A stretch of 59,028 bases of DNA, from positions 1 to 59,028 of the forward strand of contig NIVC01004126.1 of assembly GCA_002269645.1 (NCBI GenBank), in the 5' to 3' direction. This DNA comes from Macrostomum lignano (lineage: Eukaryota). Positions 4,510-51,058 of this stretch are shown piece by piece (the first letter of the stretch is position 1; the number at the start of each line of letters is the position of its first letter). The notes under the pieces were generated by a model that ran no database searches, was not told the origin of the DNA, and saw nothing but the letters and a program-made list of their open reading frames with translations. Both the position numbers and the translations under genes were made by a program.

Positions 4510-7500
4510 ATGGGCAGCAGCTCTGGCGCACCGGAAGGACTCAGCTCGCCCGTGAAGCGGTTCTGCGGCTACACCACCGCCCACGGGCTGGGCCGCTTCT
4601 CCGAGCAGTCCAACCTCATCGGCAGGGTGATCTGGGTCTCCTTCCTGCTCGCCACCTACAGCGGCTTTGCCTACCACCTGTCCACCCTGTTCGAGAGGTT
4701 TCTGCAGGCTCCGGTGCTCACTAAAATGACCGTGTCCACTCTACAGTTCGAGTTCCCGGATGTGTACATCTGCCCAACTAACGCCGTTACCATGAGCAGG
4801 ATTTTTAAAAAGCTGCCCCAAAACGAGGTCACCTTTGGCGAGTTCTTCTTAAAGAAAAGCGTCGAGGAAAAAATCGGAATTTACTCGTTTGATCTCTCCA
4901 GCGGACGGTACGATTTGGAGCTGAACGACATGACGAAGGCTTTGCTGAGCGTTCTGCACAGCATGGAGGAGATCATAATGTCTTACTTTCAGTTTTTCGA
5001 TATCGGTGAGTCCTCCTGACTGCTGTGAAGACAGCGCGCACTGTGCAGTCTGGACGAGTTGCTCTTCAAACCATTGCCCTGAACCCAATCCTAAAACGCA
5101 ATTTCATTTCTTCAGCCGACGCAGCCAAGTGTCGAAGAACGCCCTCTGGAGAAGAGTACTCCGGGAATGTGAGCTCAGCAGTTGTCTACGGATTCACCAC
5201 TATGACTGTGACGTCCATCAACACTTCGGCGTTCACGCCCAGTCCGTACAGAGGCGTCAAGCAGTGCATGAGGTGGAACGATGCAGCTCAAAAACTGCTG
5301 AGCCTCGGCGAAAGTGGCCTGGCTAACAGACTGCTGGCGCTGAACTTTTCAGACAGCGAGTCCCGGTGCCGCTCGCCGCCTGGGCTGCCTCTGTCTGAGT
5401 TCTTTCCTATCGCTAGCCGTGAGTTTCCATCTGTTTGTCCGATTTGTTTGTCTCGATCAGGTCACACGGATGGAGATTTCCGGTCCTGCCAACACCACAG
5501 GCTCGGTGTTTCGGCACGCCGGCTGCCTTCCCCTTGCGCTGACCAACTCGAGTTCGTTCAACTTCACCTGCTACCGGGGCGGCTTGAGCTCGCTCGAAAC
5601 CTGCGCTGAATGCTGCGGCAGGCGCAGCTTCCAGTACATGGCGATCAGCCGCCAGGACTGCTTCTGCGGGAGCAGCATTGGCGGCTACGAGAACAGCAGC
5701 AGCGTGTGCAACGCCTCCTGCCTCCACGACAATTCGGCAATCTGTGGATCGGAAACTGCCGTCACTGTTCTGCAGATTCGGGACAACGGTAGGTGGGATA
5801 GTCGGAGAGCGGGTTAGAGATTGGTTGCTACTCAAAAGTAGCTCAATAAAACCGATAAGTTGACGACCTGGGACAGATTTTTTATGGTCACTTGTATATT
5901 GCTGGCAAAATCAGGTCATTCTGCAGACTCGTAACTCGCAGCTCAAGGCACGCATTCCACTTTGTAGGCAGCAGGCCGTTGCACGTCGCAAACTTCAGCG
6001 ACCTGGACGCAATCTCCAGCGGGCCCTACTGCTTTTTCGCGGATGAGCTGAGCGACAAGCTGAACGCTGCATTCTGCGAAATTCCCTACTGCCGTGAGTT
6101 TCCAACATGTTGCCTGACTTTTCCTTTCAAAGACGACTTCGATTCGTGAATGAAATACTTGACGTTCCATCGCTCAATCCAGAAATTTCGAGAACCTACG
6201 ACTGCATCGTGAGCTCCGAGGACAAGCTGACTCAGCAGCAAAGGCTGTCGCGCTACACCGGACGTCGGAACGTCACCAGCACTGGCCGGCGGTGCATGCC
6301 CTGGAGTCAGCTGTCCACAATTGAGCAAGTTCTCAAGGCGCGCCGCGGTAAGAGCTTCGATTGCATTGCTCACCTGTGCCGCTGGCAAATTTAATTTCGC
6401 CTGACCGAACCAGTCAAATTCCAATTTAGGTTCGGAAGTTGGCTTCATGGACGAAGTGCGGGAAATGCTTATCCAGACTCCGGACAGGCTTGAAGGCGAG
6501 AGCGACAATTACTGCCGTCCAGTTAGCGTTGTGGTCGATTCTGTCAACATCCACGGGCCCAAGGACTTCCAGTAAGCTTCGTATTGCATCGCAAGTAGCG
6601 TATGTGTGCTTGTTGCAGCGCTCCAAAATCTTTCCTATTATTTTTAGGCGGTTTAGCGCCATCGATTCGGAGGTTCCTGTGTGCATTCCGGAAGATTTCT
6701 GGGCCAACATTCCGTCCATTACGATAAAATTTGGCTACCTGTTTAACATGATCTTTCAGACCTGTAACGTGCCACTCTGTTGTGAGTTGCGCAAGTGACA
6801 ATTGAGCTGGATCTGTTTCTCGGTTATTATTTATTATTATATTCTAGGCATTGTTTTCAGTGCATTCTGTACCGAATGAATTTCTTTAGACACCGAGGTC
6901 CCCAGCGTGACAGCCACAATCAGAGACTCCGTCGGTGAGCACCTGCTGGCCCGACAGTTCGGCAGCGACCTCAACGCCGGCCTCACCGAGTGCAGCTTCG
7001 CTGGCCAGAAGTGCACCAAGGACGACTTTTTGAACGTCGCCCACCCGCAGCTGGGCATGTGCCACAAGTTTCTCAAGCAGCGCTTCACCGCCAACATGAC
7101 CAGCACGCAGTTGGCGGAGAGCCAGCTGTCCATCAAGTACTTCACGGACTCGACAGACTCCAAGGGTCAGACGGTGTCCAACATCGACAAGCTGACGCGG
7201 GTAGTGCGAGACAGCCGCGGCTCCGATGCGACTCAGGTCGCATTCAAGGTGAGTCTTCGTCGGTCGCTGAGCGTCTCAGTGTCTCACGCAATCTCTGAGC
7301 CTGGCTGCTCAACCGCGAACCCGCAGGCGGTCATCGTCCCGGATAGCTCGTTCCCGTGGGCCTCGAACGGCGTCAATGTGGCCACCGCTCAGCGCATGGA
7401 CGTGCATCTTAGATTCGACAAGTACTCCAGACTGTCCACCTCATCGAGGCCTTGCCTTGAGACTACGGAGCCGATCACCTACCGACTGCCGTCATGGAAG

Positions 7501-8723
7501 CTGTTTACGTCAAATGAGGACTCTGGGTAAAGAAAGCAAAAAGTTTTATTTCCTTATCTTTAGTCTGCAATATTGTAAATATCAAAGCTGTTTAAAACTA
7601 AAAATTTGCTTCCAGCGTCAACTCGGATGCGCAGGAAATTATGCGATCTTCCAACTGGACGCTGAAGCTGTCTATGTTGCGCAACGCGCTGCTTAAACTG
7701 AACGGCTCAAGGTAAGATTTTGCATAAAACCCTCCTTTTTCGCGCTTCTCTGCTTCTGGGAATTTCAGCATGTCAAATCGAATTTTGCAATAATTTTAAT
7801 CTCCATGACTTCAGCGCACTGACAGTCTCGGGTAGTCAGTTCAAAGTCTCGGACAGAGAGAACTGCGTCAACACTTATGTTGTCGAAAAATTCACCAACA
7901 CCTGCCGATGCCTGCCGGGGATGCTGCCCATTCAAGAAGAGCGGTTCAAAAAGCTCAGCTACTGCTTCGACATGTACTCAAGGGGAAACATTTCGGCCAA
8001 CACTGAGAAGTGCTACATTGAGCAGTTGTCGAAGATCACGCAGTACCATTTTGAAGCCATGAACGAATGCAAGTCGCCCTGCAGCAAGACCGACTTCAGC
8101 ACCCGCTACATCACCTACCCGTGGCCGAACTTGCTCTCGGTGCAGTCTCTCGACTTTCTGAAGAAGTTGGCCTCCGACTTTGGCTATCGACACGATATCA
8201 GCTTGATGAGAGGCGCCTCAAGCATCTACTACCTTTACCTTAAGGCTCAGAACCTCTCGGACACTCCCGTCATCAACCGGAGCACCGAGGCAATTCAGAG
8301 CTTCGAAAGCGAGCTGGCGGCGTTGCAGAACCGCCTGGCTCAGCTGACGGTCCAGGCCTGGCAGTCCCGTGGCCACGAAGTCTCAGAGGAGGAGGCCTAC
8401 CCAGCCAAGAACCTGGTGGCCGACATCGGGGGTAAGTGGTCCAGGTTGATCATGCTCAACAGGTGTATCAGTATTGAAAAACCGTTAATACAAAATGAAT
8501 TTCAGGAGCTCTGGGTCTCTGGTCCGGCATCTCAATCCTAACTATCTGCGAGCTGCTGGAGCTCTTCATCTACCTGGGACAGGCGCTGGCTGCCAGAGTG
8601 CAGGCGCAGTCCCGGATGCAGTCAAAAAACGCCGACGGTCAGCCCGAAGAGTCGGCCAGGCCGGAGTCAGAGATGGTCGCGCTCGATACGGACGCAGTAA
8701 GGCATAATAATGCTCAAGTCTGA
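4510..8723 (+). CDS. DEG/ENaC channel subunit with kringle-WSC-kringle insertion (paralog 1, ~1047 aa)
   Basis: Phase-consistent GT-AG exons: 4510-5005, 5116-5418, 5501-5788, 5968-6093, 6183-6347, 6430-6571, 6648-6781, 6890-7248, 7327-7526, 7616-7711, 7815-8431, 8506-8723. Motifs: TTAHG (HG motif), TM1, FPDVYIC, CSFAGQKC..DF..HPQLGMCHKF, Cys-rich thumb, EEEAY..LVADIGGALGLWSGISILTICELLELF (TM2). Confidence 0.92.
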
Positions 8724-9039
8724 GCCTCCCAATCCCTTGTGCGGCCTCCATTCTTGTAAATCTCTCTAAAGCTGTTAGTTTTGGGTCCTCCCAAGTTGTT
8801 TAACCTTTGTCACCGCCAGCACATTAAACAGAGCCGCAAACATTGAGGATACCCTGACTTTGCGCTGCCCTCACCTAACCTGGAAGTCCCTGGGAACAAG
8901 CTTTCAAACTAAAGTTTTCACATAAATTTTAAGCACCAATTTCTTTGCGGGTCCCAGATTGCATATCTTAGGACTTAGGACAACAATAAGTGAGAATTCC
9001 ATCTTTTCACTTTCTGTTGGCATCTCGACAAGTCTAATT

Positions 9040-9210
9040 TTGTTTGAGAACTTGAGAATGCATGAGAATGCATGAGAATGCATGAGAATGCATGAGAATG
9101 CATGAGAATGCATGAGAATACTTGAGAATACTTGAGAATGCATGAGAATGCAAGAGAATGCATGAGAATGCATGAGAATGCATGAGAATGCATGAGAATA
9201 CTTGAGAATG
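9040..9210. repeat. 10-bp microsatellite (gagaatgcat)n
   Basis: Visible tandem decamers. Confidence 0.95.
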
Positions 9211-10019
9211 CAGCAGTGTTGAACTCTGTTGCTGGAGGATGCAGTTGATTAAGCGAGGCATTGTGGACTGTGGTCTTTTGGCTGCCGAAATGAATGAAGT
9301 GCAAGTGACATTAATATGAAGCTTGGTTGTGGCGGTGCGAGCTTTATACAATTTAAAGTACTTTTCACATTGCCCGTGCATACTCGTGCATACATGCGTC
9401 AAGGTTATCTAGTGACAATAGCGGTTGTAGGATTGAGTTCACCAGCGGGACCTTCTTGGTTAAACCATTGGGAATGCAGTCGGGATCCCAAAACATATTT
9501 TAGAAAATCAATAGCTGCTAGTAATATTGCACTTGAAGCGTTTCCTGACGCCAGAGTTTGCAGCCAGCGTGCACACAATTGATCACCAAGCATATCCTGC
9601 CACATGTTGCACTAGCTGCTAGCGCAGGCCAATATTTGTCACTGAGCTCTTGAGCAGCGAACGGCGGCATATCTAGAGGGGAATTTCGGGAATCAGGGAT
9701 CAGAAATTGTTGGCCTTTGTGGGGAACCTCTGCATGCCACGTACGTTGCCAGAATGACCAATGGAGTGCCGTACCCAGGAGGCCTAATAGGCGTGGTGTC
9801 AATAGCTCGTATTTGGTGTCCTTAATTCTCATTGCCTATATGATTTTTTCATTTTAATATCAAATAATAATTTTGCCGTCAACTCAGATTGACTCGTTGA
9901 GATCCTTCACCAGGGGTCGGCAGACTCCCGCCCGCAAAGCCTCTCTATCCGGCCCTCGGTCCTTTAAAACTTCACAATAGCAATCCGACCTGCTCACGGT
10001 TTGTGTCTTCTCAGATCTC

Positions 10020-10170
10020 TTCTATCTAGTCTCCTCTGCCTCTTTTCTCTCATCTTATCTCTTCTCTTCTCGCTTTTTCTCTCTCATCTCCTCGTCTCTC
10101 CTCTCCTCTCCTTTCTCTTATCTCTCATCTCCCTTCTCTCTTCTCTATTCTCTCTCCTCTCTCCCCTCCT
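10020..10170. repeat. CT-rich low-complexity tract
   Basis: Nearly pure pyrimidine. Confidence 0.85.
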
Positions 10171-10929
10171 CTGGCCCGCATGTCTATCTTACAGGATGCT
10201 TACAGGTTTTTAGTGGCTCTCCCTACCCCTGTGTCCCAGGCGATGGATGCCCCGCCCAAGAGGTGACAAAATTTGAGCTCCTGTCGTAGAACTTGGTTGC
10301 CTCTTTCATTTAGTTCTTGGAAGCGGGAAATTTATGTAGGGGGCCGATGGGGGCCCTCTGCGTACACGCTGGACCCTCACTGGAGTTTTGCCCCACTATT
10401 TCATGGATTTTTGTGTGCCTTCCGTGTTCCATTCAGATTCAGGTGCAGCAAAGAGTGGCCAGCAGTTAAGATTGGCCCCCTTTTCTACAAAGCACTCGTA
10501 AGCAACTTGATAATTTTACTGTTAACTTTGAGCAACTCAACTAACCCCAGATTTTATGCACTCACCAAACCAGATTCAAAACTTTTATGAATGCACGTGT
10601 TATTATTTTTACTGCTACATGTAAGTGCAGCAGCACAGCATGCTCTCAGCTACTTGCACAACTGTTCTCTACACAATCGTCTCTCTTGATATTTCTTCGC
10701 GTACAACGCTTACCGTCTTATGCCTATTTTCACTTTAATAAAGCCTCTGAACGTCTTTAAAACAAATCTTAAAGTCGTCAAGTCACCCTATTTTGGTGCA
10801 AAGCACGGCTGCATCGTAAATCAAGTCTTGTCTGGCTACTTTATGCAATTAGTAAAATAAATAATGCAGGCACACATGAGCCTATGCGGTGGAAAGCTAT
10901 GACCAAGAACTGCTCAAGTAGGAGGATGA

Positions 10930-11480
10930 GAAACTGTCTCTTGGAAATTTTTGGAGTCAGGTTTTACCAAAACAACACAATACGGAGATTGGAGATTTTC
11001 GTTTCTTTGGCACAAATATTGTTATTCCTTGTGATAAAAGGCAGACCCTATGTTCATCTTTTGATATTTATTGCCTTTCTTATAACTGTTGTTGATATTC
11101 ATAGAGGTCTTTTCGTTTAGAAAATTAGGACTTTATGCTAATTGAATTTACGTAATTTATGAATCTATTTTCATTCTTAGCTTAATGAGTGTAACAGATT
11201 GATAAAACAGATTCATTATCATTAAAATAATCATTAAAACAGTTGATTTATGCCATTTTTAATGATTTTAGCCTTAAGACATGTAAGCATAGGATATAAA
11301 ATTACCATAGAATCCTAATATTTCTAAATGAAAAGCTCTATGAAAATCAAAAGATGAACATTGGGTCTGTCTCCTATCAAAAGTAATTACAACTCTTTGT
11401 GCTGAAAATATGAAAACCTCCAATCTTCGTAATGTATTTTTAGTAAAATCTGCCTCCTGAAATTTTCCAGGAAACGAAGT
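10930..11480. mobile_element. Degenerate fold-back/MITE-like palindromic element
   Basis: Arm ~10930-11190 aligns to the reverse complement of ~11270-11480 (e.g. gagattggagattttc..cagaccctatgttcatcttttgat vs gaagattggaggttttc..cagacccaatgttcatcttttgat). Confidence 0.65.
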
Positions 11481-11587
11481 AGAAGCACTTTGATCGAGAA
11501 CAGTTGGTTCCCTGTTTCGATCCTGTTTCAGGGGGCTCTGGACTGTGATCATACAGAGTGTACAGCGGCCCTGGCTTTCTCATCGTG

Positions 11588-11815
11588 GCGCGAGACAGCT
11601 TAGAGGTGACGTAACTGGCGCGAGACAGCTTAGAGGTGACGTAACTGTCTCGCGCGAGACAGCTTAGAGGTGACGTAACTGTCTCGCGCGAGACAGCTTA
11701 GAGGTGACATAACTGGCGCGAGACAGCTTAGAGGTGACGTAACTGGCGCGAGACAGCTTAGAGGTGACGTAACTGTCTCGCGCGAGACAGCTTAGAGGTG
11801 ACGTAACTGGCGCGG
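11588..11815. repeat. 30/35-bp tandem array (ggcgcgagacagcttagaggtgacgtaact)
   Basis: Two unit variants visible. Confidence 0.9.
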
Positions 11816-14015: not shown

Positions 14016-15985
14016 CAGGCCAGCGCCCCATCTGCAGGCTGATCTCGGCCTCTGTTCCTCTGTTTGGAAGATTCCTACAAGCTCTGGCATCTACTGCGGT
14101 GACTGCTTCGACGTTACCGATCTTCCTGTTCCCTGCGCAGAGCCAAACGCCATGACTTCGCGCACCTCCTTACCTGTACCGCTCATCCTGCGGCTCTCGA
14201 GCCGCGGTCGATACTAAATGGATTCCACGCACAGTGGCGAGATTCCCCAAGCTGCCCATCCGTGTGCATCCGAAATTAACCAGTAGATCAGGGGTAATTT
14301 CGATAACTTTTGTAGGCCGTCGGAAATTCGGTCATTCGCTGGAATGCCAGCACTTTGTCTCCCTTGGAGGTCTTTGAAACCGACATTGTCGCCGCGAACC
14401 GCGAAATTGCGACGGTACACACTGGCCTGCTGCGCACCGCTTTCAAGATCGGCATTTGACCTGAAAGTCAACACGGTGCTTCATTGCCGCGCAGGCCTGG
14501 TGGTCCGTCCAAAAGTGACCTGCTGCGGCGTCGGCGACTCCAGCTGGGAAACCCCGCGACTTGACTAAATATGGTTCTTCATCGCGTCCTGGAGAGCGCA
14601 CAGAATGCACTGCTGAGGAAAGTCTTCGTATCGGACTACAGTACAGGTGAGGCTGTTTCAGGTGCTCTGTACAGTTTCCTGGAATTTTCCGAAGCATTTG
14701 TCAAGTAACGACTGGCTCCAATCCTGATCTGCTGCTAATGATTGTCTCACCAAAATCAGGTGTCTGGAGCAGCTGCGTCACGCCACGCCACGTCAAGTCA
14801 ATTTCATTGCTACTGACACTCAAGAGACGCCCGGTTGTTCACGTTGCGGAGCGATGAAGCTCAGGTTATAAAGATTAGCGGAACAGGAAGCCTGGTCGAC
14901 AGACTGCTGGCGAAGAAGTTCTCAAAAGTGTTCCATCCTCTTATTGGTTCTTGTCCCTGTCTTTGCTATCGTGTCCCACGTCTACCAAGAGAAGCCTCAT
15001 GATTGTACTTTTAAAAACTCTTGGCCTACATCTATTAGCCGCCTCACTGCACTGTGCTGTTCCGGTGCACTCCATGGATAAATATTTTTAATAGCTTTTC
15101 CGTATCTGCCACCATCTGAAGTCGGGCCTGACGCACACAGGCCCGAGCCATTGCGAGGATGATCCATCCTGCGAGCGCCTCAGCCGGCAGAATCTGGGCA
15201 GAAATTTTCATGAGTCAAGAAAAAGCTTGCAAAAGAAGCAGCTCTGATCGAGTTGTTGCTTGTTATTCTTAGAAATGAGCTCTGCCACTCCAGCAGCATC
15301 GATACAGATCGGGATGCTCGGGGCTTTTGTGCTTTTAACATGATTTCGAAAATTCCGCTGTGAGCAGCCTTCGAGCAAGCAGACAAGCAACAAAGGTTGA
15401 TAAGCTGAGAGCGTCAAAGACCGGCTCTGGACTTCGAAAAAACTAATTAATAAGATTTATTTAATTCCGAGCTAATTCCATAGTGAACAAAACTGCACTG
15501 CCGCACAGGAGAGCCAGTGAGCCGACAGGCAACTGAAAATGAAGCCAGAGGGCAGGCAGAAGCACTCAGACTAAGCCAGAGAGCAGTCATCCAATTTAGT
15601 TTGATCATGGGGCTTGAGGCACTACCGCGAGGCGACAGTCGACTCAAAGCCGGTGAAGGGGCAGCAGTCATGCGCATTCCACTGAACCCCTGACCACCCA
15701 CTTGCACACCGCTGACCACCCACTTGTCCCTCACAGTCCTCAAACTCCATACTCATTGTTCCCTAATCATAATTAACTGATAACAATTGGCATATAGCCA
15801 TTTACCAATGAAATGTGTAGCATTCAATGCATTAGCGAGACATAGAATTGTGTGAGGCGAGCGCGGACTACTGAGCTGAGATTCTGAAGATGCTGCAACA
15901 GAGCGAAAGTCAGAGTGGGGACCGCATTCACAGCACGGGCTGCAGTTACATGTATGTAGTGCAGAAATAAAACAGATTGTACCCA

Positions 15986-16866
15986 CAGGAGGTCAGAGAA
16001 CTAAAATGCAACAAAAGCGACATCACTGTAACTACAGGAGGTCAGAGAACTAAAATGCAACAAAAGCGACATCACTGTAACTACAGGAGGTCAGAGAACT
16101 AAAATGCAACAAAAGCGACATCACTGTAACTACAGGAGGTCAGAGAACTAAAATGCAACAAAAGCGACATCACTGTAACTACAGGAGGTCAGAGAACTAA
16201 AATGCAACAAAAGCGACATCACTGTAACTACAGGAGGTCAGAGAACTAAAATGCAACAAAAACGACATCACTGTAGTAGTTACAGTGATGTACTCATGAC
16301 AGGACAGTGACAGTGATGTACTCATGCTGTTCTCTGACAGGAGGTCAGAGAACTAAAATGCAACAAAAGCGACATCACTGTAACTACAGGAGGTCAGAGA
16401 ACTAAAATGCAACAAAAACGACATCACTGTAACTACAGGAGGTCAGAGAACTAAAATGCAACAAAAGCGACATCACTGTACCTACAGGAGGTCAGAGAAC
16501 TAAAATGCAACAAAAGCGACATCACTGTAACTACAGGAGGTCAGAGAACTAAAATGCAATAAAAACGACATCACTGTAACTACAGGAGGTCAGAGAACTA
16601 AAATGCAACAAAAACGACTCACTGTAACTACAGGAGGTCCGAGAACTAAAATACAACAAAAGCGACATCACTGTAACTACAGGAGGTCAGAGAACTAAAA
16701 TGCAACAAAAACGACATCACTGTAACTACAGGAGGTCCGAGAACTAAAATACAACAAAAGCGACATCACTGTAACTACAGGAGGTCAGAGAACTAAAATG
16801 CAACAAAAACGACATCACTGTAACTACAGGAGGTCCGAGAACTAAAATACAACAAAAGCGACATCA
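15986..16866. repeat. 49-bp tandem array (caggaggtcagagaactaaaatgcaacaaaagcgacatcactgtaacta)
   Basis: Period 49 (15986 to 16035); interrupted at ~16275-16340. Confidence 0.95.
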
Positions 16867-17812: not shown

Positions 17813-19017
17813 ATGTCTACCATGTCTAACATGTCAAAAATGTCTACCATGTCTAACATGTCTACCATGTCTAAAATGTCTAACATGTCTACCATGTCTA
17901 CCATGTCTACCATGTCTAACATGTCTACCATGTCTAACATGTCTACCATGTCTAACATGTCTACCATGTCTAACATGTCAAAAATGTCTACCATGTCTAA
18001 CATGTCTACCATGTCTAACATGTCAAAAATGTCTACCATGTCTAACATGTCTACCATGTCTAAAATGTCTAACATGTCTACCATGTCTACCATGTCTACC
18101 ATGTCTAACATGTCTACCATGTCTAACATGTCTACCATGTCTAACATGTGTACCATGTCTACCATATCTACCATGTCTAACATGTCTACCATGTCTAACA
18201 TGTCTAACATGTCTACCATGTCTACCATGTCTACCATGTCTAACATGTCTACCATGTCTAACATGTGTACCATGTCTACCATGTCTACCATGTCTAACAT
18301 GTCTACCATGTCTAACATGTCTACCATGTCTAACATGTCTACCATGTCTAACATGTCTACCATGTCTAACATGTGTACCATGTCTACCATATCTAACATG
18401 TCTACCATGTCTACCATGTCTACCATGTCTAACATGTCTACCATGTCTAACATGTGTACCATGTCTGCCATGTCTACCATGTCTAACATGTCTACCATGT
18501 CTAACATGTGTACCATGTCTGCCATGTCTACCATGTCTAACATGATGTCTACCATGTCTACCATGTCTACCATGTCTAACATGTCTACCATGTCTAACAT
18601 GTCTACCATGTCTAACATGTCTACCATGTCTAACATGTCTACCATGTCTAACATGTCTACCATGTCTAACATGTCTACCATGTCTAACATGTGTACCATG
18701 TCTACCATATCTAACATGTCTACCATGTCTACCATGTCTACCATGTCTAACATGTCTACCATGTCTAACATGTGTACCATGTCTGCCATGTCTACCATGT
18801 CTAACATGTCTACCATGTCTAACATGTGTACCATGTCTGCCATGTCTACCATGTCTAACATGTCTACCATGTCTAACATGTCTACCATGTCTAACATGTG
18901 TACCATGTTCTAACATGTCTACCATGTCTAACATGTCTACCATGTCTAACATGTCTACCATGTCCACCATGTCTACCATGTCTAACATGTCTACCATGTC
19001 TAACATGTCTACCATGT
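17812..19017. repeat. 9-bp microsatellite (catgtctac/catgtctaa)n, ~1.2 kb
   Basis: Produces the MST/MSN and MLD/MVD pseudo-ORFs. Confidence 0.97.
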
Positions 19018-19385: not shown

Positions 19386-19409
19386 CCCAACCCAACCCAA
19401 TTAATAGAA

Positions 19410-19645
19410 GGAAGACCAATGTTCATCTTTTGATATGTCTCGCCTTTCTTATAGCTATAGATTTCGTGTATAAAATTAGGATTCTATGCTAATTGCATAT
19501 CCTACGTACATTTACAATCGTACATGCCCTATGCCTAATAATCATAAAAATGGAACAACTAGACTCATTGGCTTTATGAATCTATTTTAATAGCATATCA
19601 TTCTTAGCTTAATGACCTGCCTCCTAACATTTTCCAAGAATTTTA
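19410..19645. mobile_element. Internally deleted relative of the 10.9-11.5 kb fold-back element
   Basis: accaatgttcatcttttgata..aaaattaggattctatgctaattg..ttatgaatctatttt..cattcttagcttaatga..ctgcctcc shared with that element. Confidence 0.6.
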
Positions 19646-19699
19646 GTTTCTTGCCCTTCTACTTGAGCAGTCCATGTATTTTATGAATGGTTCATTGAC

Positions 19700-19845
19700 A
19701 CCTTCACTGTTTTGATTCTCAAGCCGCTGGAAACGTGTCCATGGAAACGGACATGCATGTGCTGCAGAGAGCAACAGTCGAAGGTGGTGCTGGAGTACCA
19801 GTTTGCTGGGGTCCGGCTGTGCCAGCCTCCACAGCCGAACACAGC
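19700..19845 (+). pseudogene. Decayed fragment of the thumb-domain exon of DEG/ENaC paralog 2
   Basis: ctgttttgattctcaagccgctggaaacgtgtcc..gctggagtaccagtttgctg matches the reverse complement of ~22930-23075 with small indels. Confidence 0.85.
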
Positions 19846-20099
19846 GGGTATTGATTTTAAGGTTGCCTTTGCTTCCACCAGATTGCACAAAGCTCTGTAT
19901 ACCATCCTTTAGGGAACCACGGAAGCTGCCACTACACTGTACGCAAGTGCGTACTACCATAATTTCCCACTCAACTAACTGGTGCTATTCAATATAACGC
20001 TCCGACGGGCAAAATTAGCAGCGCATTTCGCTAAACCTGGTAGGCAACTTTGCAGACGAGTGCAGGATCGAGCTGCCGCCATTGTCAACGCGCCGCCAC

Positions 20100-20170
20100 C
20101 CCTAACCCTAACCCTAACCCTAACCCTAACCCTAACCCTAACCCTAACCCTAACCCTAACCCTAACCCTA
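20100..20170. repeat. Interstitial telomeric repeat (CCCTAA)11+
   Basis: 11 perfect units plus a partial unit. Confidence 0.97.
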
Positions 20171-20962
20171 CCCGCTGTCTGCCAGACCCTGTAAACGAGT
20201 AGAGCTTTAACTTCGATTGTTTGCCATGCAGCCTCGTAAGCAGACAAACTTGTGAAACCGCCCTGAACCAAGCGAACCAAGTCCAATTAGACTAATCAAA
20301 TTTTTTTATTGCAAGGCCGTGACAGCCGCTGTGGACGAAGCAGGTGGCAGGTGATTTTGATTAAATTTTGATTAAATTAATGATGCTGTTGACTCCCTGG
20401 TGTGGCAGCTTAGTGCATGGGGAAGTCTGAGCAACAGGGCATTAAGACTGAGCTCTCTCGTGAACTCGGGGGCATCCCTGCCGCTCTGATTCTCCGAGCA
20501 GAATGCCAAAAACCCAATGTCGATCTGACTCAGGGCCGCAGTTTTCACCCACTTTGAAAACATGCCTAGAAAAACAGAAGTTGGGCACGGATGCTCCGCC
20601 TGATTGTCTCAGTCTTCTTCGCAGCCGGTGCGAGACTCGATGGCTCCGGCACGTGACGCTCCGGTAAGCAGAGAAAGAAGCTCGTTCTCGGATAGTGACG
20701 TGACTCGATGTGGTGCTCAAAGAATCCTAATCGGATCCTCAGGCTGATCCTCCGAGGCGACCTTGGTCTGAGAGCAGCCAACCAAGGAGCCTAATGCCAA
20801 TGCGGGCAGTGATCGAGCGTCAAGCTTCACCGTCAGCTTGCTCTGCCGATGCATTTACTCCAGCTTCTTAGCCTCCTGCTTTCTGAAGGTGTGTGGAACC
20901 TGACGTTGGTCGCTGACGGATCGAGAGCGCGCCATTCTCCAGCTTCTCCAGACGTTCCCTCA

Positions 20963-21210
20963 ACAGTGACGTTCCCTCAGCAGTGACGTTCCCTCAGCAG
21001 TGACGTTCCCTCAGCAGTGACGTTCCCTCAGCACTGACGTTCCCTCAGCAGTGACGTTCCCTCAGCAGTGACGTTCCCTCAGCACTGACGTTCCCTCAGC
21101 AGTGACGTTCCCTCAGCAGTGACGTTCCCTCAGCACTGACGTTCCCTCAGCAGTGACGTTCCCTCAGCAGTGACGTTCCCTCAGCAGTGACGTTCCCTCA
21201 GCAGTGACGT
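20963..21210. repeat. 17-bp tandem array (cagtgacgttccctcag)
   Basis: Visible tandem units. Confidence 0.95.
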
Positions 21211-21551
21211 CACGCGACTGCTATTGCAGCGGCGCTGCTATATGGAAGCTCCGGATTGACATCGAACTCCATTTAATGGGCTCCGCCACTAATGCATATC
21301 TTCATCCTCGTTTATGATTTTGGCGCTCTCGAAGGTGCCAAAGCTCCAGTTGGAGTACAGCATGACCGGGTGCAGACAACGACAGGACAGCGGTACATCA
21401 CGCTCGGGTTTGGTGTCACTAAAGGGGGACACGCCATCGAAGGCAATCGTCTTGGCGGTCTGGTCTTTCTCCCTCGCCACGAGCCATTGGCGCAAATAAT
21501 CTGGTCTGGCTGTTTCAGACTGAATGAATGATAAATCAAATACGCTCGAAA

Positions 21552-21570
21552 TCTGTCTGTCTGTCTGTCA

Positions 21571-21617
<47 letters not shown>

Positions 21618-21665
21618 ATGGCGTCTGTCTGTCTTAGCGTCTGTCTGTCTGTCTGTCTGTCTGTC
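21552..21665. repeat. (TCTG)n microsatellite
   Basis: Visible. Confidence 0.95.
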
Positions 21666-22222
21666 AACTAGCAGCTGTTTTATTGCGTAATAAAGTCTGT
21701 CTTGGTATTCACGATTAAGTTTCAGTAACTTTTTCAGGGTTAAAAAGTTCGACGCTTCTCCGAGTTAGATGCCGAGAAAGTGCAGCCATCGATCGAAAAG
21801 TCTCTACAGGCACGTCTAAATAAAACGAATTTATTCAGGAGTGACGATAAGAATTTAAAGGTCAAGTTTTGTAAGAGGAAAGGAAAAAAGAAAAAAACAA
21901 GTAAGCAAAGGAAAAAGGTTTCTGTGAAAACTATTTCTGATCTGACAAACAGATGAAGAGAACTAACATCAAAATGTCTTACCAAACATACTCGTACATC
22001 GTTAGGTTTGTCATTAAAGATTTAAAATGAAGCGAGTGAAACATACTTGTATTCTTTAAACTTTGCTTATATAATTCTTTAGTAGATAGGAATTCCAAGC
22101 ACAGCAAGGCCAACAGATGTCAATCGGTGTTCATGGGCTGGTTACGGAGACCTTACAAATTACCAGGCACCTGTACTTCTAGTTTCCGGCATCAATTCTC
22201 AAACCACATTCACGACTTCTCG

Positions 22223-25200
22223 TTACATTCTGGAATTGGACTCCAACTCAACCTGGACAGAATCCTGACTCACAGCCGACTGTATCATCTCCGAGCACCC
22301 AGCAACAGATGAGGCCACGGTTGGGACACTGCCGGTATTGGTGCAATTGTTGTTGAAGTTGTTGTTGGCGCCAGGGCCGCCGTTGTTCCGGTTGCGGGGC
22401 GCAGCGACTCTGTGGAATTTGTAGCCGATGGCCAGGCCGATGTAGATGAGCAGCTCGAGCAGCTCGCAAACTGTCAGAATGGAAATTCCCGACCAAAGAC
22501 CCAAGGCACCTGCAATTTTAGGCATGAGATGCGAAAGCTGACATTCCTGGGAGACTTGGGATCCAGGGTCACTGAGTACAGAACCTGCTCATTGTCACCT
22601 CCAATGTCGGCCACGAGGTTCTTGGCCGGGTAGGCCTCCTCCTCCAAGATCTCCTGGCCGAATGACGTCCAGGCCTGAACCGTCAGCTGAGCCAGTCGGT
22701 TCTGCAGCACCGTCAGCTCGTTTTGAAAGCTCAGGATTTCTGTCGCGCTCCGATTGCTGACAGGAATGGCCGAATCCCTCAGGGATCTCAGGTAGATGCT
22801 GTAGATGCTGTTCAGGCCCCTCAGGCCGCTGGGGTTGCTGCCGTATCCAAACGCGGTGGCCAGGGTTTTCAGAAACGAGAACGACTGCAGACCGTTCAGG
22901 TTCGGCCACGGATAGGTGATGTGGCGGACGCTGTACTCGGCTGTACGGCAGGGAGACTGGCACAGCCGGACCGCAGCAAACTGGTACTCCAGCACCTTCG
23001 ACTTCTGCTCTCTGTAGCACATGTCCGTTTCTATGGACACGTTTCCAGCGGCTTGAAAATCAAAACAGTAGGTGTAATTCGAAAAGTACTCCACCGGAAT
23101 CGGCAGGAACGACGGCAGGCAGTGGCATTCCGCGATGAACTTCTTCACAACGTGTCTGTTGATGCAGTCGTCTCGGTCAGTCAGCTTGAATTCTGAGTCG
23201 AATTCCGACAGCGAACTGCAAATTTGGGAAATGCGTGGAACTTTTGCAAACCTGGCAGTCACACTCGCACAAGCTAAAGCCTATGGTCCATACCTCAATG
23301 CACCTTGCTTCTGCTTTCGAAGCTGCACTTCCATTGCGGCAACTTTCAGCCACCAATCAGTCACCATGAAAACCGCATTTAAGTCGAAACTGTAGCTGTA
23401 AAGGGAATCATTGATCAGTCAGTGCGCAGTCTTCACGGCGATAAAATATTTCTGCATGAAGACTCACTCCGGGTTCTCATTAAATGGAGCCGACTTCCAT
23501 GACGGCAGTCGGTAGGTGATTGGCTCCGTAGTCTCAAGGCAAGGCCTCGATGAGGTGGACAGTCTGGAGTACTTGTCGAACCTCAGCTGCACATCCATGC
23601 GCTGAGCGGTGGCCACATCGATTCCCTTCGAGGCCCACGGGAACGAGCTATCCGGGACGATGACCGCCTGCGGGTTCGCGGTTGAGCAGCCAAGCTCAGA
23701 GATTGCGTGAGACATTGAGACGCTCAGCGACCGACGAAGACTCACCTTGAATGCGACCTGAGTCGCATCGGAGCCGCGGCTGTCTCGCACTACCCGCGTC
23801 AGCTTGTCGATGTTGGACACCGTCTGACCCTTGGAGTCTGTCGAGTCCGTGAAGTACTTGATGGACAGCTGGCTCTCCGCCAACTGCGTGCTGGTCATGT
23901 TGGCGGTGAAGCGCTGCTTGAGAAACTTGTGGCACATGCCCAGCTGCGGGTGGGCGACGTTCACAAAGTCGTCCTTGGTGCACTTCTGGCCAGCGAAGCT
24001 GCAGTCGGCGAGGCCGGCGTTGAGGTCGCTGCCGAACTGTCGGGCCAGCAGGTGGCTGCCGACTGAGTCTCTGACGGCGCCCGTCACGCTGGGGACCGTG
24101 GCATCTGTTAAATGTTATGTGAATGCGGGATCAGGAAAGATATTTTTAATGAGAATTTCCTACTATCAATCGGTTGTTCAACAAAGGGCTCTAAAGACCC
24201 TGAAAAAGCGACTTACAACACAGCGGGATCTCGCAGGGCTCAAAGTCAGCATCAAAGAGACCGCCCCAGCCCATGATGTCCGGGATGCAGCCCGGCACAT
24301 CAGACATTTCTTGTGCGAAGCGACTGAAGTTATGTTTTTATAAATTGAAGCAGAGGCTGAGTTAAACATATTTAAAGTTTTATGCAGCAGAAGTCAAAGA
24401 AAGAATTCGATATAGGAAGATTTTCTTACGAAGCCTCGTGCGTACTAAAGTACGAGCCGTGGTCGATAACGATCTGCGCCGATCGGCAGAAATTGTCGCT
24501 GCTGTTGGGATTGAAGTCCGGAGTCTGAATGTGAAATCCGAACTGCTTGTGGTAACCTGTGAGTAGTCGGCGTTTGCAAGTCATGGATATGAATATGAAC
24601 TCGGGCATTTTATCGCATTCTGTGCATGCAGCGGTCGCATAGTTACCCATTCTTATGTACGTATCCTCTTGTATCTTCTCCAGCTTACTCCACGGCACGC
24701 ACGGCTTCCCAGTGATTGTGTAGTTTTTCCTACCGGTGTACCGGGCCCGAGTCAGCCGCTCAAGGGTCTTGTTCTCAGAGCTCACGATGCAGTCGTAAGC
24801 ACCTGACATCGCTGAAAAAGTGTAGCATTCGTGCGGTGTAACCGAGGAGACAATCCTCGGTATGGCAAACTCACTCACGGCAGAAGGGCACATCGCAGAA
24901 CGCAGCGCCCAGCCTGTCTCGCTCATCAGTGAAGAAGCAGTAGGGCCCGTGCGAGAAGACTGTGAGGTTGCTGAAGTTTCCCACCTGCAGCGGCCTCGGC
25001 TCTGCAAGCGGATTGAGCCTCGGCTAGAGTTATAGAGGCTTCTGCTGACGAGAATTCAAGAGACTCACCTGTGTCTCCGATCTGCAGCACCGTGATGGCG
25101 GTTGCTGACCCGCAGTGCTGCTGATCGTTGCTGGCGCAGCGACTGCTGCAGACGCCGCTGTCATTGCCGGAGCTTGGGGGACTCGCTCCGCACAGGCAGC

Positions 25201-26354
25201 TGTCAACTTGCAGCGCGATGTGGCTGAAGTCGAGCGAAGCGCAACAGTGAGCGCAGGTCTCGTGAGTCACAATGCCTTCCGTGTCGCAGGTGTAGTTGAA
25301 TTCATGGTCGGTGAAGTTCGCCTCAAAGCAACCAACAAGCCGCAGCGTGGGGCCTGTAATTCCAGGTTCGGTTGGAATGTCGAATAAAGCCGAATAAAGC
25401 TTGCAAAACAATCTCTTGACTCACGATTCGCGATGGGGAAAAAATCGGACAGCGGGAGCCCTGGCGGGGAGCGACAGCGAGACTCGCTGTCGGAGAAGTT
25501 CAGCGCCAGCAGTCGGTCAGCGAGGCTGTGTGTTAAACTGGTGTTCACACTTCTCAGCCTCTGAGCCGCATCGTTCCATTGCATGCACTGCCTGTACGTC
25601 CTGAATGGCGGCAGCACGCCAGAAATGTTCGAAGCCGTGACTCGCATCTTCGTCCGATCGTAGACAACCGCAACACTGGCGTTGCCCGAGTAATCCTCAC
25701 CGGAGAGCGTGGTCCTGCACTCCACTCTGCCTGAGAAGTTCGTTGCACAGTGGGAATCACTGAACTACTCATAAAATACTGAGAAAGATGAACTTGTAGA
25801 TGCAGATATATTAGGAACTCACTGCTCTTGGGAAACTGCAGCTCGGCCATGAGCGACCTCTCGGCACTCTGCAGCACATTCATCAGAGCTTGCGCCGGCT
25901 TGTTCTGCGCAGCGTAGTTCCCAGACTCCAAGTCGAACTCATAGAAGTGTATCTTGAAATCGATCTGGACTGTCCTGTCATTCTCTCTCCAGTTGATTAG
26001 GCCTATCGGCATCTGCTCAATGGCCCTGCTCAGTGTGACGGCTTGTGCGGGACAGATGTACACATCCGGGAACTCGTACGACAGCGTGGACATTGTCATG
26101 GTGGTGAGCACCGGGGCGGTGAGGAACCTGCCGAACAGGGTGTACAGGTGGTAGACGAAGCCGCTGTAGGTGCCGAGCAGGAAGGCCAGCCAGATCATCC
26201 TGCCGAGCAGGCTGGACTGGTGAGCGAAGCGACCGAGTCCGTGCGCGGTGGTGTAGTCCAGGAAGCTGGCCACGAACTGGCGCAGATTCCTGTCGCTGCG
26301 TGAGGAGTCGGCAACGACAGCGTTGCCGCTCGGCGTCTGAGCTGCTGCGCTCAT
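22223..26354 (-). CDS. DEG/ENaC channel subunit with kringle-WSC-kringle insertion (paralog 2, ~1069 aa)
   Basis: Phase-consistent exons: 26354-25823, 25730-25425, 25353-25069, 25001-24879, 24811-24647, 24556-24430, 24323-24217, 24104-23746, 23667-23468, 23395-23294, 23215-22599, 22509-22223. Same intron phases and motifs as paralog 1 (TTAHG, FPDVYIC, LVADIGGALGLWSGISILTVCELLEL). Confidence 0.92.

Positions 26355-51027: not shown

Positions 51028-51058
<31 letters not shown>

What the first reader, a model, noticed from the sequence alone, without database searches (positions are those of the whole stretch)
4510..26354. DEG/ENaC channels carrying an extracellular kringle-WSC-kringle cassette: candidate new ligand-sensing channel class
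Seen: both spliced genes have a complete DEG/ENaC frame (HG motif, TM1, FPDVYIC, palm/thumb cysteines, TM2). Between FPDVYIC and the CSF..C palm motif, where the variable finger domain normally lies, six exons encode ~390 aa. These comprise kringle-like 1 (six Cys: KCRR..GEEYSG, QCMRW, RCRSP, PYCF, FCEIPYC), a WSC domain (GC..TC..CC..CFCG..C..C..CG) and kringle-like 2 (YDC..RYTG.N.T.TG..C.PW, NYCR, PVC, TCNVPLC). Known: the finger is the gating/ligand-adapting region of ENaC, ASIC, FaNaC and degenerins; kringle+WSC co-occur in Kremen receptors; WSC is a glycan-binding module also found in PKD1 and yeast Wsc sensors. Inference: these may be channels gated by an extracellular protein or glycan, or tethered mechanosensors. 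I do not know of a described channel with this architecture but cannot search.
Basis: partly seen in the sequence, partly recalled or inferred. Interest (0 to 1): 0.92.

Follow-up and report, generated by a model that had tools for sequence, protein, structure and literature searches.

The report
Flatworm sodium channels with kringle–WSC insert
Two neighbouring genes of the flatworm Macrostomum lignano encode DEG/ENaC-type ion channel subunits with a ~380-residue cysteine-rich binding module (a kringle-like domain split by a WSC domain, then a second kringle-like domain) built into the part of the channel that normally senses the gating stimulus; I found this layout in no paper and in no other organism's proteins.

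Summary
The window is contig NIVC01004126.1 of Macrostomum lignano. It carries two convergent, intact DEG/ENaC paralogues: gene 1 on + (4510-8696, plus a small last exon at 10437-10469) and gene 2 on - (26354-22223). In both, six exons encode 371-386 aa inserted in the finger region, between the post-TM1 FPDVYIC strand and the CxFxGxxC motif.

- **Channel core:** ASC scores 147 bits in Pfam.
- **WSC:** solid. It passes the Pfam cut-off in three paralogues and matches Kremen and yeast Wsc1 at E~1e-9.
- **Kringles:** supported only by profile methods (hhalign ~95% probability, all six Cys in register). They fall below the Pfam cut-off. An AlphaFold model of kringle-like domain 2 did not retrieve the kringle fold.
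- **New detail:** the WSC exon sits inside kringle 1, between Cys3 and Cys4.
- **Transcript support:** the GenBank model of gene 1, from an RNA-seq-based annotation, joins the insert and the channel in one ORF.
- **Distribution:** at least eight M. lignano paralogue lineages, down to 29-32% identity, keep the insert and its cysteines. An exhaustive search of 1.84 billion representative proteins found the whole insert only in M. lignano.
- **Literature:** no paper describes it.

Function is inferred only. It is most likely a matrix- or glycan-binding module acting on the gating finger. I rate it a new variant of a known channel family, of moderate-to-high interest.

The parts
4510..10469 (+). 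Gene 1 (GenBank BOX15_Mlig006056g1, 1049 aa), 13 exons: 4510-5005, 5116-5418, 5501-5788, 5968-6093, 6183-6347, 6430-6571, 6648-6781, 6890-7248, 7327-7526, 7616-7711, 7815-8431, 8506-8696, 10437-10469
   Evidence: Exact spliced mapping of P0001 onto the window; all introns are GT-AG. The exon 3/4 junction can equally be 5792/5972 and gives the same protein; homology with gene 2 favours 5788/5968.
4510..5005 (+). Gene 1 exon 1: cytoplasmic N-terminus with HG motif (~4582-4587), TM1 (~4627-4692), beta1 FPDVYIC (4753-4773) and the proximal finger; ends in phase 1
   Evidence: Translation. Aligns to TM1/beta1 of FaNaC (7yvb residues 73-160; 8on7 residues 8-84).
5116..5418 (+). Gene 1 exon 2: N-terminal part of kringle-like domain 1 (Cys1-Cys3: CRRTPSGEEYSGN ... 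QCMRW ... SRCRSP); phase 1-1
   Evidence: hhalign of this part alone against the kringle profile: score 23.6, P 5e-4, aligned to kringle positions 3-53; shuffles reach at most 18.7. C, Y, G, C, W and CR.P are invariant across paralogues.
5501..5788 (+). Gene 1 exon 3: WSC domain (10 Cys), nested inside kringle-like domain 1; phase 1-1
   Evidence: Pfam WSC 26.4 bits here and 39-43 bits in paralogues. Profile against PDB: Wsc1 7pz2 at 1.7e-9, Kremen-1 at 1.8e-9. Foldseek top hits are Kremen and Wsc1.
5968..6093 (+). Gene 1 exon 4: C-terminal part of kringle-like domain 1 (Cys4-Cys6: GPYCFF ... FCEIPYC); phase 1-1
   Evidence: hhalign of this part alone: score 28.1, P 2.3e-6, aligned to kringle positions 59-79. 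Aligns to the Kremen kringle C-terminus SPWCY..YCEIPAC.
6183..6781 (+). Gene 1 exons 5-7 (6183-6347, 6430-6571, 6648-6781): kringle-like domain 2 (YDC ... RYTGRRNVTSTGRRCMPW ... DNYCRP ... PVC ... CNVPLC), ~140 aa with two large inserts; the unit as a whole is phase 1-1
   Evidence: hhalign 94.6%, score 45.6 against shuffles of 10 +/- 2. PDB hits include tPA kringle 2 at 2.8e-4, plus HGF and ROR1. The homologous segment of a paralogue is named 'Kringle domain-containing protein' in UniProt. Against this, the AF2 model found no kringle fold match.
6890..8696 (+). Gene 1 exons 8-12: rest of the DEG/ENaC extracellular domain (distal finger helix, beta-ball CSFAGQKC..GMCHKF, palm, Cys-rich thumb), TM2 with the G-I-S filter (~8508-8579) and the C-terminus
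   Evidence: Pfam ASC profile positions 147-455. TM2 aligns to FaNaC ADIGGTLGLWMGISVLTIMEL.
22223..26354 (-). Gene 2 (my model, 1069 aa), 12 exons: 26354-25823, 25730-25425, 25353-25069, 25001-24879, 24811-24647, 24556-24430, 24323-24217, 24104-23746, 23667-23468, 23395-23294, 23215-22599, 22509-22223
   Evidence: Homology-guided splice model: single ORF, all introns GT-AG, same exon plan as gene 1. It resembles UniProt A0A1I8IV52 (P0003), which comes from another assembly.
24217..25730 (-). Gene 2 insert, exons 2-7: kringle 1 N-part 25730-25425, WSC 25353-25069, kringle 1 C-part 25001-24879, kringle-like domain 2 24811-24217
   Evidence: Aligns with the gene 1 insert at 49-51% identity, with every cysteine conserved. 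dN/dS ~0.33.
6897..7500 (.). Gene-conversion tract shared with 24097-23494 (exons 8-9 and the intron between them)
   Evidence: 96% DNA identity over 604 bp, against 71-81% for the other exons. dS is 0.107 here against ~1-2 elsewhere.
19645..19845 (+). Short relic of a third copy (thumb-region fragment) between the two genes
   Evidence: tblastn of P0003 residues 1086-1146: 41% identity, with 74% over the 26-aa core.

Best explanation
These are two real, expressed-type paralogous subunits of a Macrostomum-restricted clade of DEG/ENaC channels.

**Origin (inferred from the exon structure).** A cysteine-rich, heavily N-glycosylatable module was assembled by exon shuffling into a phase-1 intron of the finger region, the alpha1-alpha3 segment at the outer upper corner of each subunit. 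The module is a kringle-like domain whose Cys3-Cys4 loop hosts a complete WSC domain, followed by a second, expanded kringle-like domain.

**Channel competence.** The core keeps the sequence hallmarks of a conducting channel that I checked: the HG motif, two TM segments, the G-x-S filter and the thumb/palm cysteines.

**Proposed mechanism (inferred, not shown).** The module is an extracellular binding device. The WSC would bind glycan, and the kringles would bind protein without the classical lysine pocket. Together they would anchor the finger to matrix or surface material, or to a macromolecular ligand. Pull on the module, or its occupancy, would move the finger and, through the thumb and palm, the gate. 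In effect this would be a built-in tether or ligand arm on a DEG/ENaC channel.

**Confidence.** About 0.9 for the architecture; about 0.3-0.4 for the tether/ligand-arm mechanism.
For: **One ORF, transcript-based annotation**
- P0001 maps exactly onto 13 GT-AG exons.
- The GenBank annotation of this assembly was built from StringTie/TACO RNA-seq assemblies (PMC5730564).
- The contig is NIVC01004126.1.

**Channel core**
- Pfam ASC scores 131-174 bits.
- TM1/beta1 and TM2 align with the FaNaC, ASIC, ENaC and PPK26 structures; FaNaC 7yvb is best at 1.3e-14.

**Position of the insert**
- The insert falls between P0001 residues 91 and 578. These correspond to FaNaC1 residues 84-165, which contain alpha1-alpha3a, the FMRFamide pocket. 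That paper describes this corner as important for gating across the superfamily and as the proposed site of matrix tethering (PMC11026163).
- A cassette-less M. lignano DEG/ENaC, Mlig049925.g2, has ~80 aa in this interval against ~495 aa here.

**Modules**
- WSC.
- Kringles.

**Selection and age**
- 22 insert cysteines, plus the Y-x-G, C-x-W and CR-x-P motifs, are invariant among paralogues that are only 29-49% identical.
- Insert identity (29-32%) is close to core identity (35-37%) for the most distant pairs.
- dN/dS is ~0.33.
- At least eight paralogue lineages carry the insert.

**Extracellular nature**
- The ectodomain has 13-16 N-x-S/T sequons and an even number of Cys.

**Exon shuffling**
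- Exons 2, 3, 4 and 5, and the pair 6+7, are each phase 1-1.
Against: - There are no functional, expression or localisation data of any kind.
- Kringle membership rests on profile-profile scores. Pfam scores are below threshold.
- The AlphaFold model of kringle-like domain 2 (pLDDT 69.9) is a helix plus a five-stranded sheet, with no Foldseek match to kringles.
- The whole-insert model is poor, pLDDT 61.7.
- The classical kringle lysine-binding Asp-x-Asp after CRNP is absent. In kringle 1 that loop is where the WSC is inserted (alignment; the pocket residues are from my own knowledge).
- Because exon 1 ends and exon 8 starts in phase 1, an isoform that skips the insert would stay in frame and cannot be excluded.
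- Older UniProt models of paralogues lack single insert exons (P0004, P0008, P0002). These could be prediction errors or real alternative splicing.
- I did not find gene 2 among the GenBank proteins returned by the searches.
- No orthologue outside M. lignano was found, so conservation is shown only within one genome.
Confidence: 0.45

Rival explanations
1. Soluble macromolecular ligand gating. The insert would be the receptor site for a secreted protein or proteoglycan, as the Kremen kringle, WSC and CUB domains bind Dickkopf. Binding would open or modulate the channel with no mechanical tether.
For: The closest solved relatives are ligand-gated FaNaCs, whose agonist pocket is made by the same finger segment. 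Kremen is the best structural and sequence match for the WSC plus the kringle end.
Against: The domain order differs from Kremen and there is no CUB domain (alignment). No candidate ligand is known. WSC domains elsewhere are mostly glycan- or cell-wall-binding (established knowledge). I could not test this rival here.
Confidence: 0.2
2. Regulatory or auto-inhibitory insert. The module would hold the finger in a closed or open state and be released or remodelled by proteolysis or redox, like the inhibitory tracts (GRIP domain) in the ENaC finger. Alternatively it would serve folding, trimer assembly, clustering or trafficking, and not sense a stimulus.
For: ENaC carries protease-sensitive inserts at the same corner (PMC11026163; PMC6197857 listed). 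The loops of kringle-like domain 2 are basic in some paralogues (KARR, KQRKQK). Yeast Wsc1 WSC domains mediate clustering (established knowledge).
Against: The basic motifs are not conserved among paralogues. A 380-aa, 22-Cys, two-fold-type module is elaborate for a simple inhibitory peptide. Its cysteine framework and motifs are conserved as strongly as the channel core.
Confidence: 0.2
3. Annotation or assembly artefact. The insert exons would be a separate nested gene, or normally skipped, so the real channel would have an ordinary finger.
For: Skipping exons 2-7 keeps the reading frame. Some older models of paralogues lack single insert exons. I have not seen reads.
Against: - The same order (exon 1, insert, core) occurs at two loci in this window and at six or more further loci on other contigs.
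- Introns are short (67-179 bp) and all GT-AG, with compatible phases and no stop codons.
- The RNA-seq-derived GenBank models P0001, P0005, P0158 and P0162 contain insert and channel in one ORF.
- Without the insert, the finger would keep only ~100 aa, split between exon 1 and exon 8.
Confidence: 0.07
4. Non-conducting adhesion or receptor protein. The DEG/ENaC scaffold would be used as a trimeric display platform for the binding modules, and ion conduction would be lost or irrelevant.
For: No currents have been recorded. Three other M. lignano DEG/ENaCs gave no response to the peptides tested in oocytes, though those are different genes (PMC9234716).
Against: The TM2 pore motif GALGLWSGISILT(I/V)CEL, the HG motif and the pre-TM2 DIGG are invariant across paralogues that are 35% identical in the core. 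That points to selection on the pore.
Confidence: 0.08

Closest known systems
FMRFamide-gated sodium channels (FaNaC; PDB 7yvb, 8on7) and DEG/ENaC channels in general (ASIC, ENaC, PPK, degenerins)
   Same: Pfam ASC family. HG motif, TM1, FPxxxxC beta1, Cys-rich thumb, and TM2 with the G-x-S filter. FaNaCs are the best sequence match among solved structures at 1.3e-14. In all of these the finger is the variable, stimulus-reading part.
   Different: - The finger interval is ~495 aa here, against ~80 aa in a cassette-less M. lignano channel and ~80 aa in FaNaC1 (residues 84-165).
- It contains recognisable shuffled modules (WSC, kringle-like), not just helices and loops.
- Identity to FaNaC outside the TM regions is very low.
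- The word-indexed searches found no close relative in any other species.
- Ligand, ion selectivity and gating are unknown.
Kremen-1/2 (kringle-WSC-CUB Wnt co-receptors; PDB 5fws/5fwt)
   Same: This is the only well-known protein that combines a kringle with a WSC domain. It is the best Foldseek hit for the insert model (E 8e-6) and a top profile hit (1.8e-9). Its kringle C-terminus and its WSC both align to the insert.
   Different: In Kremen the kringle is complete and comes before the WSC. Here the WSC lies inside kringle 1, and a second kringle-like domain follows. There is no CUB domain. Kremen is a single-pass receptor, not a channel.
Yeast Wsc1 cell-wall mechanosensor domain (PDB 7pz2); polycystin-1 also carries a WSC domain
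   Same: The WSC fold and cysteine framework. Profile E 1.7e-9; Foldseek probability 1.00, with target-normalised TM-score 0.55. Both link a WSC domain to sensing at the cell surface.
   Different: Wsc1 is a single-pass sensor that signals through Rom2/Rho1, not a channel. The window's WSC has 10 cysteines, and the extra CC pair is invariant in the family alignment. That WSC domains bind glycans is established knowledge for other proteins and was not tested for this one.
Nematode degenerins (MEC-4/MEC-10) and ENaC finger inserts (GRIP domain)
   Same: They set a precedent for lineage-specific extra sequence in the DEG/ENaC ectodomain that controls gating: matrix tethering is proposed for MEC-4, and proteolytic release occurs in ENaC (and established knowledge).
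   Different: Those inserts are family-specific sequences, not shuffled kringle or WSC modules. In the MEC-4 complex the matrix-binding domains sit on separate proteins (MEC-1, MEC-5, MEC-9). Here a putative binding module is part of the channel subunit itself.

Membership tests
DEG/ENaC (Pfam ASC, PF00858) | Match to the family HMM above the curated threshold | tested here: met
   146.6 bits (P0001), 131.2 (P0005) and 173.9 (P0162), against a cut-off of 23.6. The match is split into parts before and after the insert.
DEG/ENaC (Pfam ASC, PF00858) | Topology and signature motifs: N-terminal HG, TM1, post-TM1 FPxxxxC, Cys-rich ectodomain, and TM2 with the G-x-S filter and conserved Glu | tested here: met
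   TAHGLGRF, FPDVYIC and DIGGALGLWSGISILTICELLE are present in both genes. The TM2 and pre-TM2 motifs are invariant in the core alignment of the paralogues. TM1 and TM2 align to FaNaC, ASIC and ENaC chains.
DEG/ENaC (Pfam ASC, PF00858) | Trimeric, amiloride-sensitive, Na+-selective conductance | not testable with these tools
   Needs expression and electrophysiology.
WSC domain (PF01822) | Match to the family HMM above the curated threshold | tested here: met
   At family level: 39.1 bits (P0005), 41.4 (P0162) and 43.0 (P0014), against a cut-off of 27.8. The two window genes score 26.4, just below it.
WSC domain (PF01822) | Similarity to solved WSC structures in sequence and fold | tested here: met
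   Profile against PDB: Wsc1 7pz2 at 1.7e-9 and Kremen-1 at 1.8e-9. Foldseek: Kremen 5fwt at 8e-6 and Wsc1 at 1.5e-4, probability 1.00. The model is only pLDDT ~56-80 in this region.
WSC domain (PF01822) | Carbohydrate binding | not testable with these tools
   Needs a glycan array or pull-down with recombinant domain.
Kringle domain (PF00051) | Match to the family HMM above the curated threshold | tested here: not met
   10.6-22.7 bits against a cut-off of 34.3, and always only the first third of kringle-like domain 2.
Kringle domain (PF00051) | Six cysteines and the Y-x-G / C-x-W / CR-x-P / P-[WY]-C / C-x-[IV]-P-x-C motifs in register with the consensus (profile-profile test) | tested here: met
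   - hhalign against 10 canonical kringles: kringle 1 without the WSC gives 94.9%, P 4e-8; kringle 2 gives 94.6%, P 7e-8. Shuffles reach at most 19, against ~45 observed.
- The two halves of kringle 1 align separately to kringle positions 3-53 and 59-79.
- PDB hits include tPA K2 at 2.8e-4 and HGF at 3.3e-4.
Kringle domain (PF00051) | Kringle fold with 1-6, 2-4, 3-5 disulfides | tested here: inconclusive
   The AF2 model of kringle-like domain 2 (8-sequence alignment, pLDDT 69.9) has no Foldseek hit to any kringle; the best E-value is 0.2, to unrelated folds.
Kringle domain (PF00051) | Lysine-binding pocket (anionic Asp-x-Asp after CRNP); typical of plasminogen-type kringles, not of all kringles | tested here: not met
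   The sequence reads CRSPPG... in kringle 1 and CRPVSV... in kringle 2. In kringle 1 this loop is the WSC insertion site (alignment).
Kremen family | Linear kringle - WSC - CUB ectodomain on a single-pass receptor | tested here: not met
   The WSC lies inside kringle 1, there is no CUB match, and the protein is a two-TM ASC channel.
FaNaC (peptide-gated subfamily) | Activation by FMRFamide-type peptides through the alpha1-alpha3 finger pocket | not tested
   There is only distant sequence similarity, and the finger cannot be aligned. The M. lignano genes tested by Dandamudi et al. were other genes: Mlig049925.g2, Mlig051885.g1 and Mlig041003.g1.

The most novel reading that the evidence does not exclude
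The insert would be a built-in extracellular tether. A lectin-type WSC domain and two kringle-derived domains on each subunit's finger would bind glycan-rich matrix or cuticular/ciliary material, so that displacement pulls the finger and opens the pore. That would be the first DEG/ENaC in which the long-postulated extracellular gating tether is part of the channel polypeptide. It would also be a rare natural example of a whole domain (WSC) nested inside a kringle.
Probability: 0.22. Interest if true: 0.85.

Novelty: new variant of a known kind. Interest (0 to 1): 0.6.

Why it matters
How DEG/ENaC channels read such different stimuli (force, protons, peptides, proteases) through one scaffold is an open question, and the finger corner is the recurring answer. 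For the mechanosensitive members, the extracellular tether has been inferred genetically but never pinned to a defined domain on the channel.

This subfamily has recognisable, separately foldable binding modules spliced into the finger. That makes the coupling testable by clean domain deletion: joining exon 1 to exon 8 stays in frame. Domain swaps and binding assays are also possible.

The host organism suits the work: transgenesis is established, and so is RNAi (from my own knowledge). The family is also a textbook-style case of exon shuffling. Each module is phase 1-1, and one module sits inside another's intron.

Tried and rejected
- I substituted the P0003 segment.
- **Word-indexed searches.** Searches with the full protein and with a core profile returned only M. 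lignano proteins. They gave no outgroup, no deeper alignment and no placement within the DEG/ENaC tree. I left the third search unused because it would have reused the same words.
- **Whole-insert AlphaFold model.** Confidence was low at pLDDT 61.7. Foldseek recognised only the WSC/Kremen part.
- **AlphaFold model of kringle-like domain 2.** It did not retrieve kringles, so a structural confirmation of the kringle fold failed.
- **Literature.** 'kringle' with ENaC and degenerin gave one irrelevant protease review. 'WSC domain' with ENaC gave nothing. 'kringle' with ASIC and 'domain architecture' gave nothing. The gene IDs Mlig006056, 007204, 028168, 034226, 026586, 013355 and 029271 gave nothing.
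- **'These are the channels already tested by Dandamudi et al. 2022.'** Rejected. The gene IDs differ, and Mlig049925.g2 matches only in the TM1 and TM2 regions (25% and 40% identity) and lacks the insert.
- **'Kremen-like tandem cassette.'** Rejected, because the kringle C-terminal half follows the WSC instead of preceding it.
- **'A cassette-less close paralogue exists (P0166, 524 aa, ASC only).'** Rejected. P0166 starts inside kringle-like domain 2 and overlaps the end of P0014.

Full report
**Identity of the window.** The window is the complete 59,028-bp contig NIVC01004126.1 of the Macrostomum lignano Mlig_3_7 assembly (GCA_002269645.1). M. lignano is a free-living flatworm. GenBank annotates three genes in the first 20 kb:
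- a zf-U1 protein (27-614);
- ribosomal protein L22e (1733-2119);
- BOX15_Mlig006056g1 (4510-10469), with Pfam ASC and weak WSC.

**Gene models.**
- Gene 1 matches the GenBank protein P0001 (1049 aa) exactly over 13 exons, and every intron is GT-AG. My first crude model differed in three places. It placed the acceptor of exon 11 wrongly. It also lacked the final 33-nt exon at 10437-10469. Without that last splice, the ORF would stop at 8720-8722.
- Gene 2 lies on the minus strand, convergent with gene 1. I built it by homology with gene 1 and with UniProt A0A1I8IV52 (P0003). The result has 12 GT-AG exons and one intact ORF of 1069 aa.
- The paper describing this assembly states that the GenBank annotation comes from a genome-guided RNA-seq transcriptome (StringTie, TACO, and de novo transcripts) (PMC5730564). 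Gene 1's model joining insert and channel therefore rests on transcript assemblies, although I have not seen the reads.
- I did not find gene 2 among the GenBank proteins returned by the searches.

**The channel frame.**
- Pfam ASC scores 146.6 bits for P0001 and 131-174 bits for paralogues, against a cut-off of 23.6. The match is interrupted between about profile positions 129 and 147.
- The HG motif, TM1, FPDVYIC, the CxFxGxxC...GxCHxF beta-ball motif, the Cys-rich thumb and TM2 (DIGGALGLWSGISILTICELLELFIY, with a G-I-S filter) are all present. The TM2 and pre-TM2 motifs are invariant among paralogues that are 35-37% identical in the core.
- Among solved structures, the best matches are the FMRFamide-gated channels: 7yvb at 1.3e-14 and 8on7 at 1.4e-12. 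ASIC, PPK26 and ENaC follow.

**Where the insert sits.**
- P0001 residues 15-91 align to Malacoceros FaNaC1 residues 8-84, and P0001 578-611 align to FaNaC1 165-199.
- The intervening FaNaC1 segment contains helices alpha1-alpha3a (V87-F144), which form the FMRFamide pocket. The authors describe this outer corner as important for gating across the superfamily and as the proposed matrix-tethering site of mechanosensitive members (PMC11026163).
- A cassette-less M. lignano DEG/ENaC, Mlig049925.g2, has about 80 residues between the two landmarks. P0001 has about 495, of which 386 are exons 2-7.

**What the insert is.**

*WSC (exon 3).*
- It scores 26.4 bits in both window genes, just under the cut-off of 27.8. 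Paralogues P0005, P0162 and P0014 score 39-43 bits.
- The family profile hits yeast Wsc1 (7pz2) at 1.7e-9 and Kremen-1 at 1.8e-9.
- The whole-insert AlphaFold model is weak (pLDDT 61.7). Even so, its top Foldseek hits are Kremen and Wsc1.

*Kringle-like domains.*
- The evidence comes from sequence profiles only. Pfam Kringle reaches just 10-22 bits against a cut-off of 34.3, and always on the YTG..N.T.SG..C..W stretch of the second domain.
- Every non-WSC hit of the insert profile in the PDB is a kringle protein: tPA K2 at 2.8e-4, HGF at 3.3e-4, then ROR1/2, plasminogen, prothrombin, apo(a) and uPA at weaker E-values.
- UniProt names the corresponding fragment of a paralogue 'Kringle domain-containing protein'.
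Domain 1 with the WSC excised gives 94.9% (score 44.9). All six cysteines are in register. Column-shuffled controls score 10-11 +/- 2, with maxima of 17-19.
- The two halves of domain 1 align on their own to complementary parts of the kringle. Exon 2 aligns to positions 3-53 (score 23.6, P 5e-4). Exon 4 aligns to positions 59-79 (score 28.1, P 2e-6).
- The WSC exon therefore lies inside kringle 1, between Cys3 (CR-x-P) and Cys4 (GPYCF). In plasminogen-type kringles that loop carries the Asp-x-Asp of the lysine-binding site (my own knowledge). That motif is absent from both domains here.
- Both kringle-like domains are much larger than a canonical kringle: 107 aa and 126-140 aa, against about 80.
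- A separate AlphaFold model of domain 2 (pLDDT 69.9) shows a helix plus a five-stranded sheet and found no kringle in the PDB.
- I therefore call them kringle-like or kringle-derived. Homology is supported; the fold is unconfirmed.

**Exon logic.** Exon 1 ends in phase 1. Exons 2, 3, 4 and 5, and the pair 6+7, are each phase 1-1, and exon 8 starts in phase 1. This is the classical signature of shuffled extracellular modules. It explains how a WSC exon could land in an intra-kringle intron. It also means that skipping the whole insert, or single modules, would keep the reading frame. Some older UniProt models of paralogues lack single insert exons. I cannot tell whether that reflects prediction error or real splicing.

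**Family and selection.**
- All relatives found are from M. lignano: P0001-P0009, P0011, P0014, P0036, P0080, P0158, P0162 and P0166-P0170. Every one that covers the region carries insert sequence. That makes at least eight paralogue lineages on different contigs.
- The most distant full-length paralogues (P0005, P0162) are 29-32% identical to gene 1 in the insert and 35-37% in the core.
- Twenty-two insert cysteines and the kringle and WSC signature residues are invariant.
- Between the two window genes, the insert has dN/dS of about 0.33, with synonymous sites near saturation.
- The ectodomains carry 13-16 N-glycosylation sequons and an even number of cysteines.

**Distribution.**
- An exhaustive HMMER scan of 1.84 billion representative proteins with the insert profile gave 3,588 hits at E<=0.001. 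Matches to the whole insert were found only in M. lignano proteins. The rest of the top 150 (101 bits or more) are proteins with repeated WSC domains.
- This does not exclude weaker orthologues scoring below 101 bits, or DEG/ENaCs elsewhere that carry a single WSC or kringle domain.
- Transcriptomes of other Macrostomum species may not be in the library. I could not check which species it holds.

**Literature.** No paper in the searchable library combines kringle or WSC with DEG/ENaC channels, apart from a protease review that mentions kringles in proteases. None cites these gene IDs. Dandamudi et al. 2022 tested three other M. lignano DEG/ENaCs, which gave no response to the peptides tried (PMC9234716).

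**Mechanism.**

*Shown:*
- a complete channel scaffold under purifying selection;
- a conserved, cysteine-rich, glycosylatable module in the finger;
- homology of its parts to WSC (strong) and kringle (moderate).

*Inferred:* WSC domains elsewhere bind glycans or cell-wall polymers, and kringles mediate protein binding. The finger corner transmits stimulus to the gate in FaNaC, ASIC and ENaC, and is the proposed tether site in mechanosensitive members. I therefore judge a binding arm that couples external material (matrix or glycan, or a macromolecular ligand) to gating to be the most likely role. The rivals are an auto-inhibitory or assembly role, soluble-ligand gating, a non-conducting adhesion role, and annotation artefact. 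I weigh each in its own section.

**Verdict.**
The architecture is real and I found no description of it, but this is a lineage-restricted variant of DEG/ENaC and not a new class, and its function is untested.
- Interest 0.6.

Noticed in passing
window 6897-7500 (+) and 24097-23494 (-): The two convergent paralogues share a 604-bp tract at 96% identity, covering exons 8-9 and the 78-bp intron between them. Their other exons are only 71-81% identical. dS is 0.107 in this tract against ~1-2 elsewhere. This points to recent gene conversion between inverted copies about 16 kb apart.
   Followed up: partly
window 19645-19845 (+): A short relic of a third DEG/ENaC copy lies between the two genes. 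It is a thumb-region fragment (SKVVLEYQFAGVRLCQPP...) with 41-74% identity to the gene 2-like protein P0003.
   Followed up: no
window 8697-10469 (+): The GenBank model of gene 1 splices from 8696 across a 1740-nt intron to a 33-nt last exon (10437-10469). Read-through would instead end the protein at 8720-8722 (...DAVRHNNAQV). Which C-terminus is used is not settled.
   Followed up: partly
whole window, e.g. 965-1665, 15978-16866, 17813-19017, 26977-28063, 32454-34374, 43796-45141, 46190-47184, 50678-51507: The contig is unusually dense in minisatellite arrays: 52 TRF rows with score >=200, periods of 10-145 bp, and up to 67 copies. These produce many long spurious ORFs, especially in 27-59 kb, where I saw no convincing gene other than a possible one at 57909-58712 (-).
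   Followed up: no
window 30439-31445 and 26664-26735 (-): The N-terminal 230 aa of UniProt model P0003 (from another assembly) map to repeat-rich sequence upstream of gene 2. This is probably a mis-predicted 5' extension and not real coding exons.
   Followed up: no
P0004, P0008, P0002 (UniProt models of paralogues at other loci): Several older models lack single insert exons. P0004 lacks most of kringle-like domain 2, P0008 lacks the exon for the kringle 1 C-part, and P0002 lacks exon 7. All of these skips stay in frame because of the phase 1-1 design, so modular alternative splicing of the insert is possible.
   Followed up: no
window 27-614 and 1733-2119 (+): Two housekeeping-type genes (a zf-U1 protein and ribosomal protein L22e) lie directly upstream of gene 1.
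   Followed up: no
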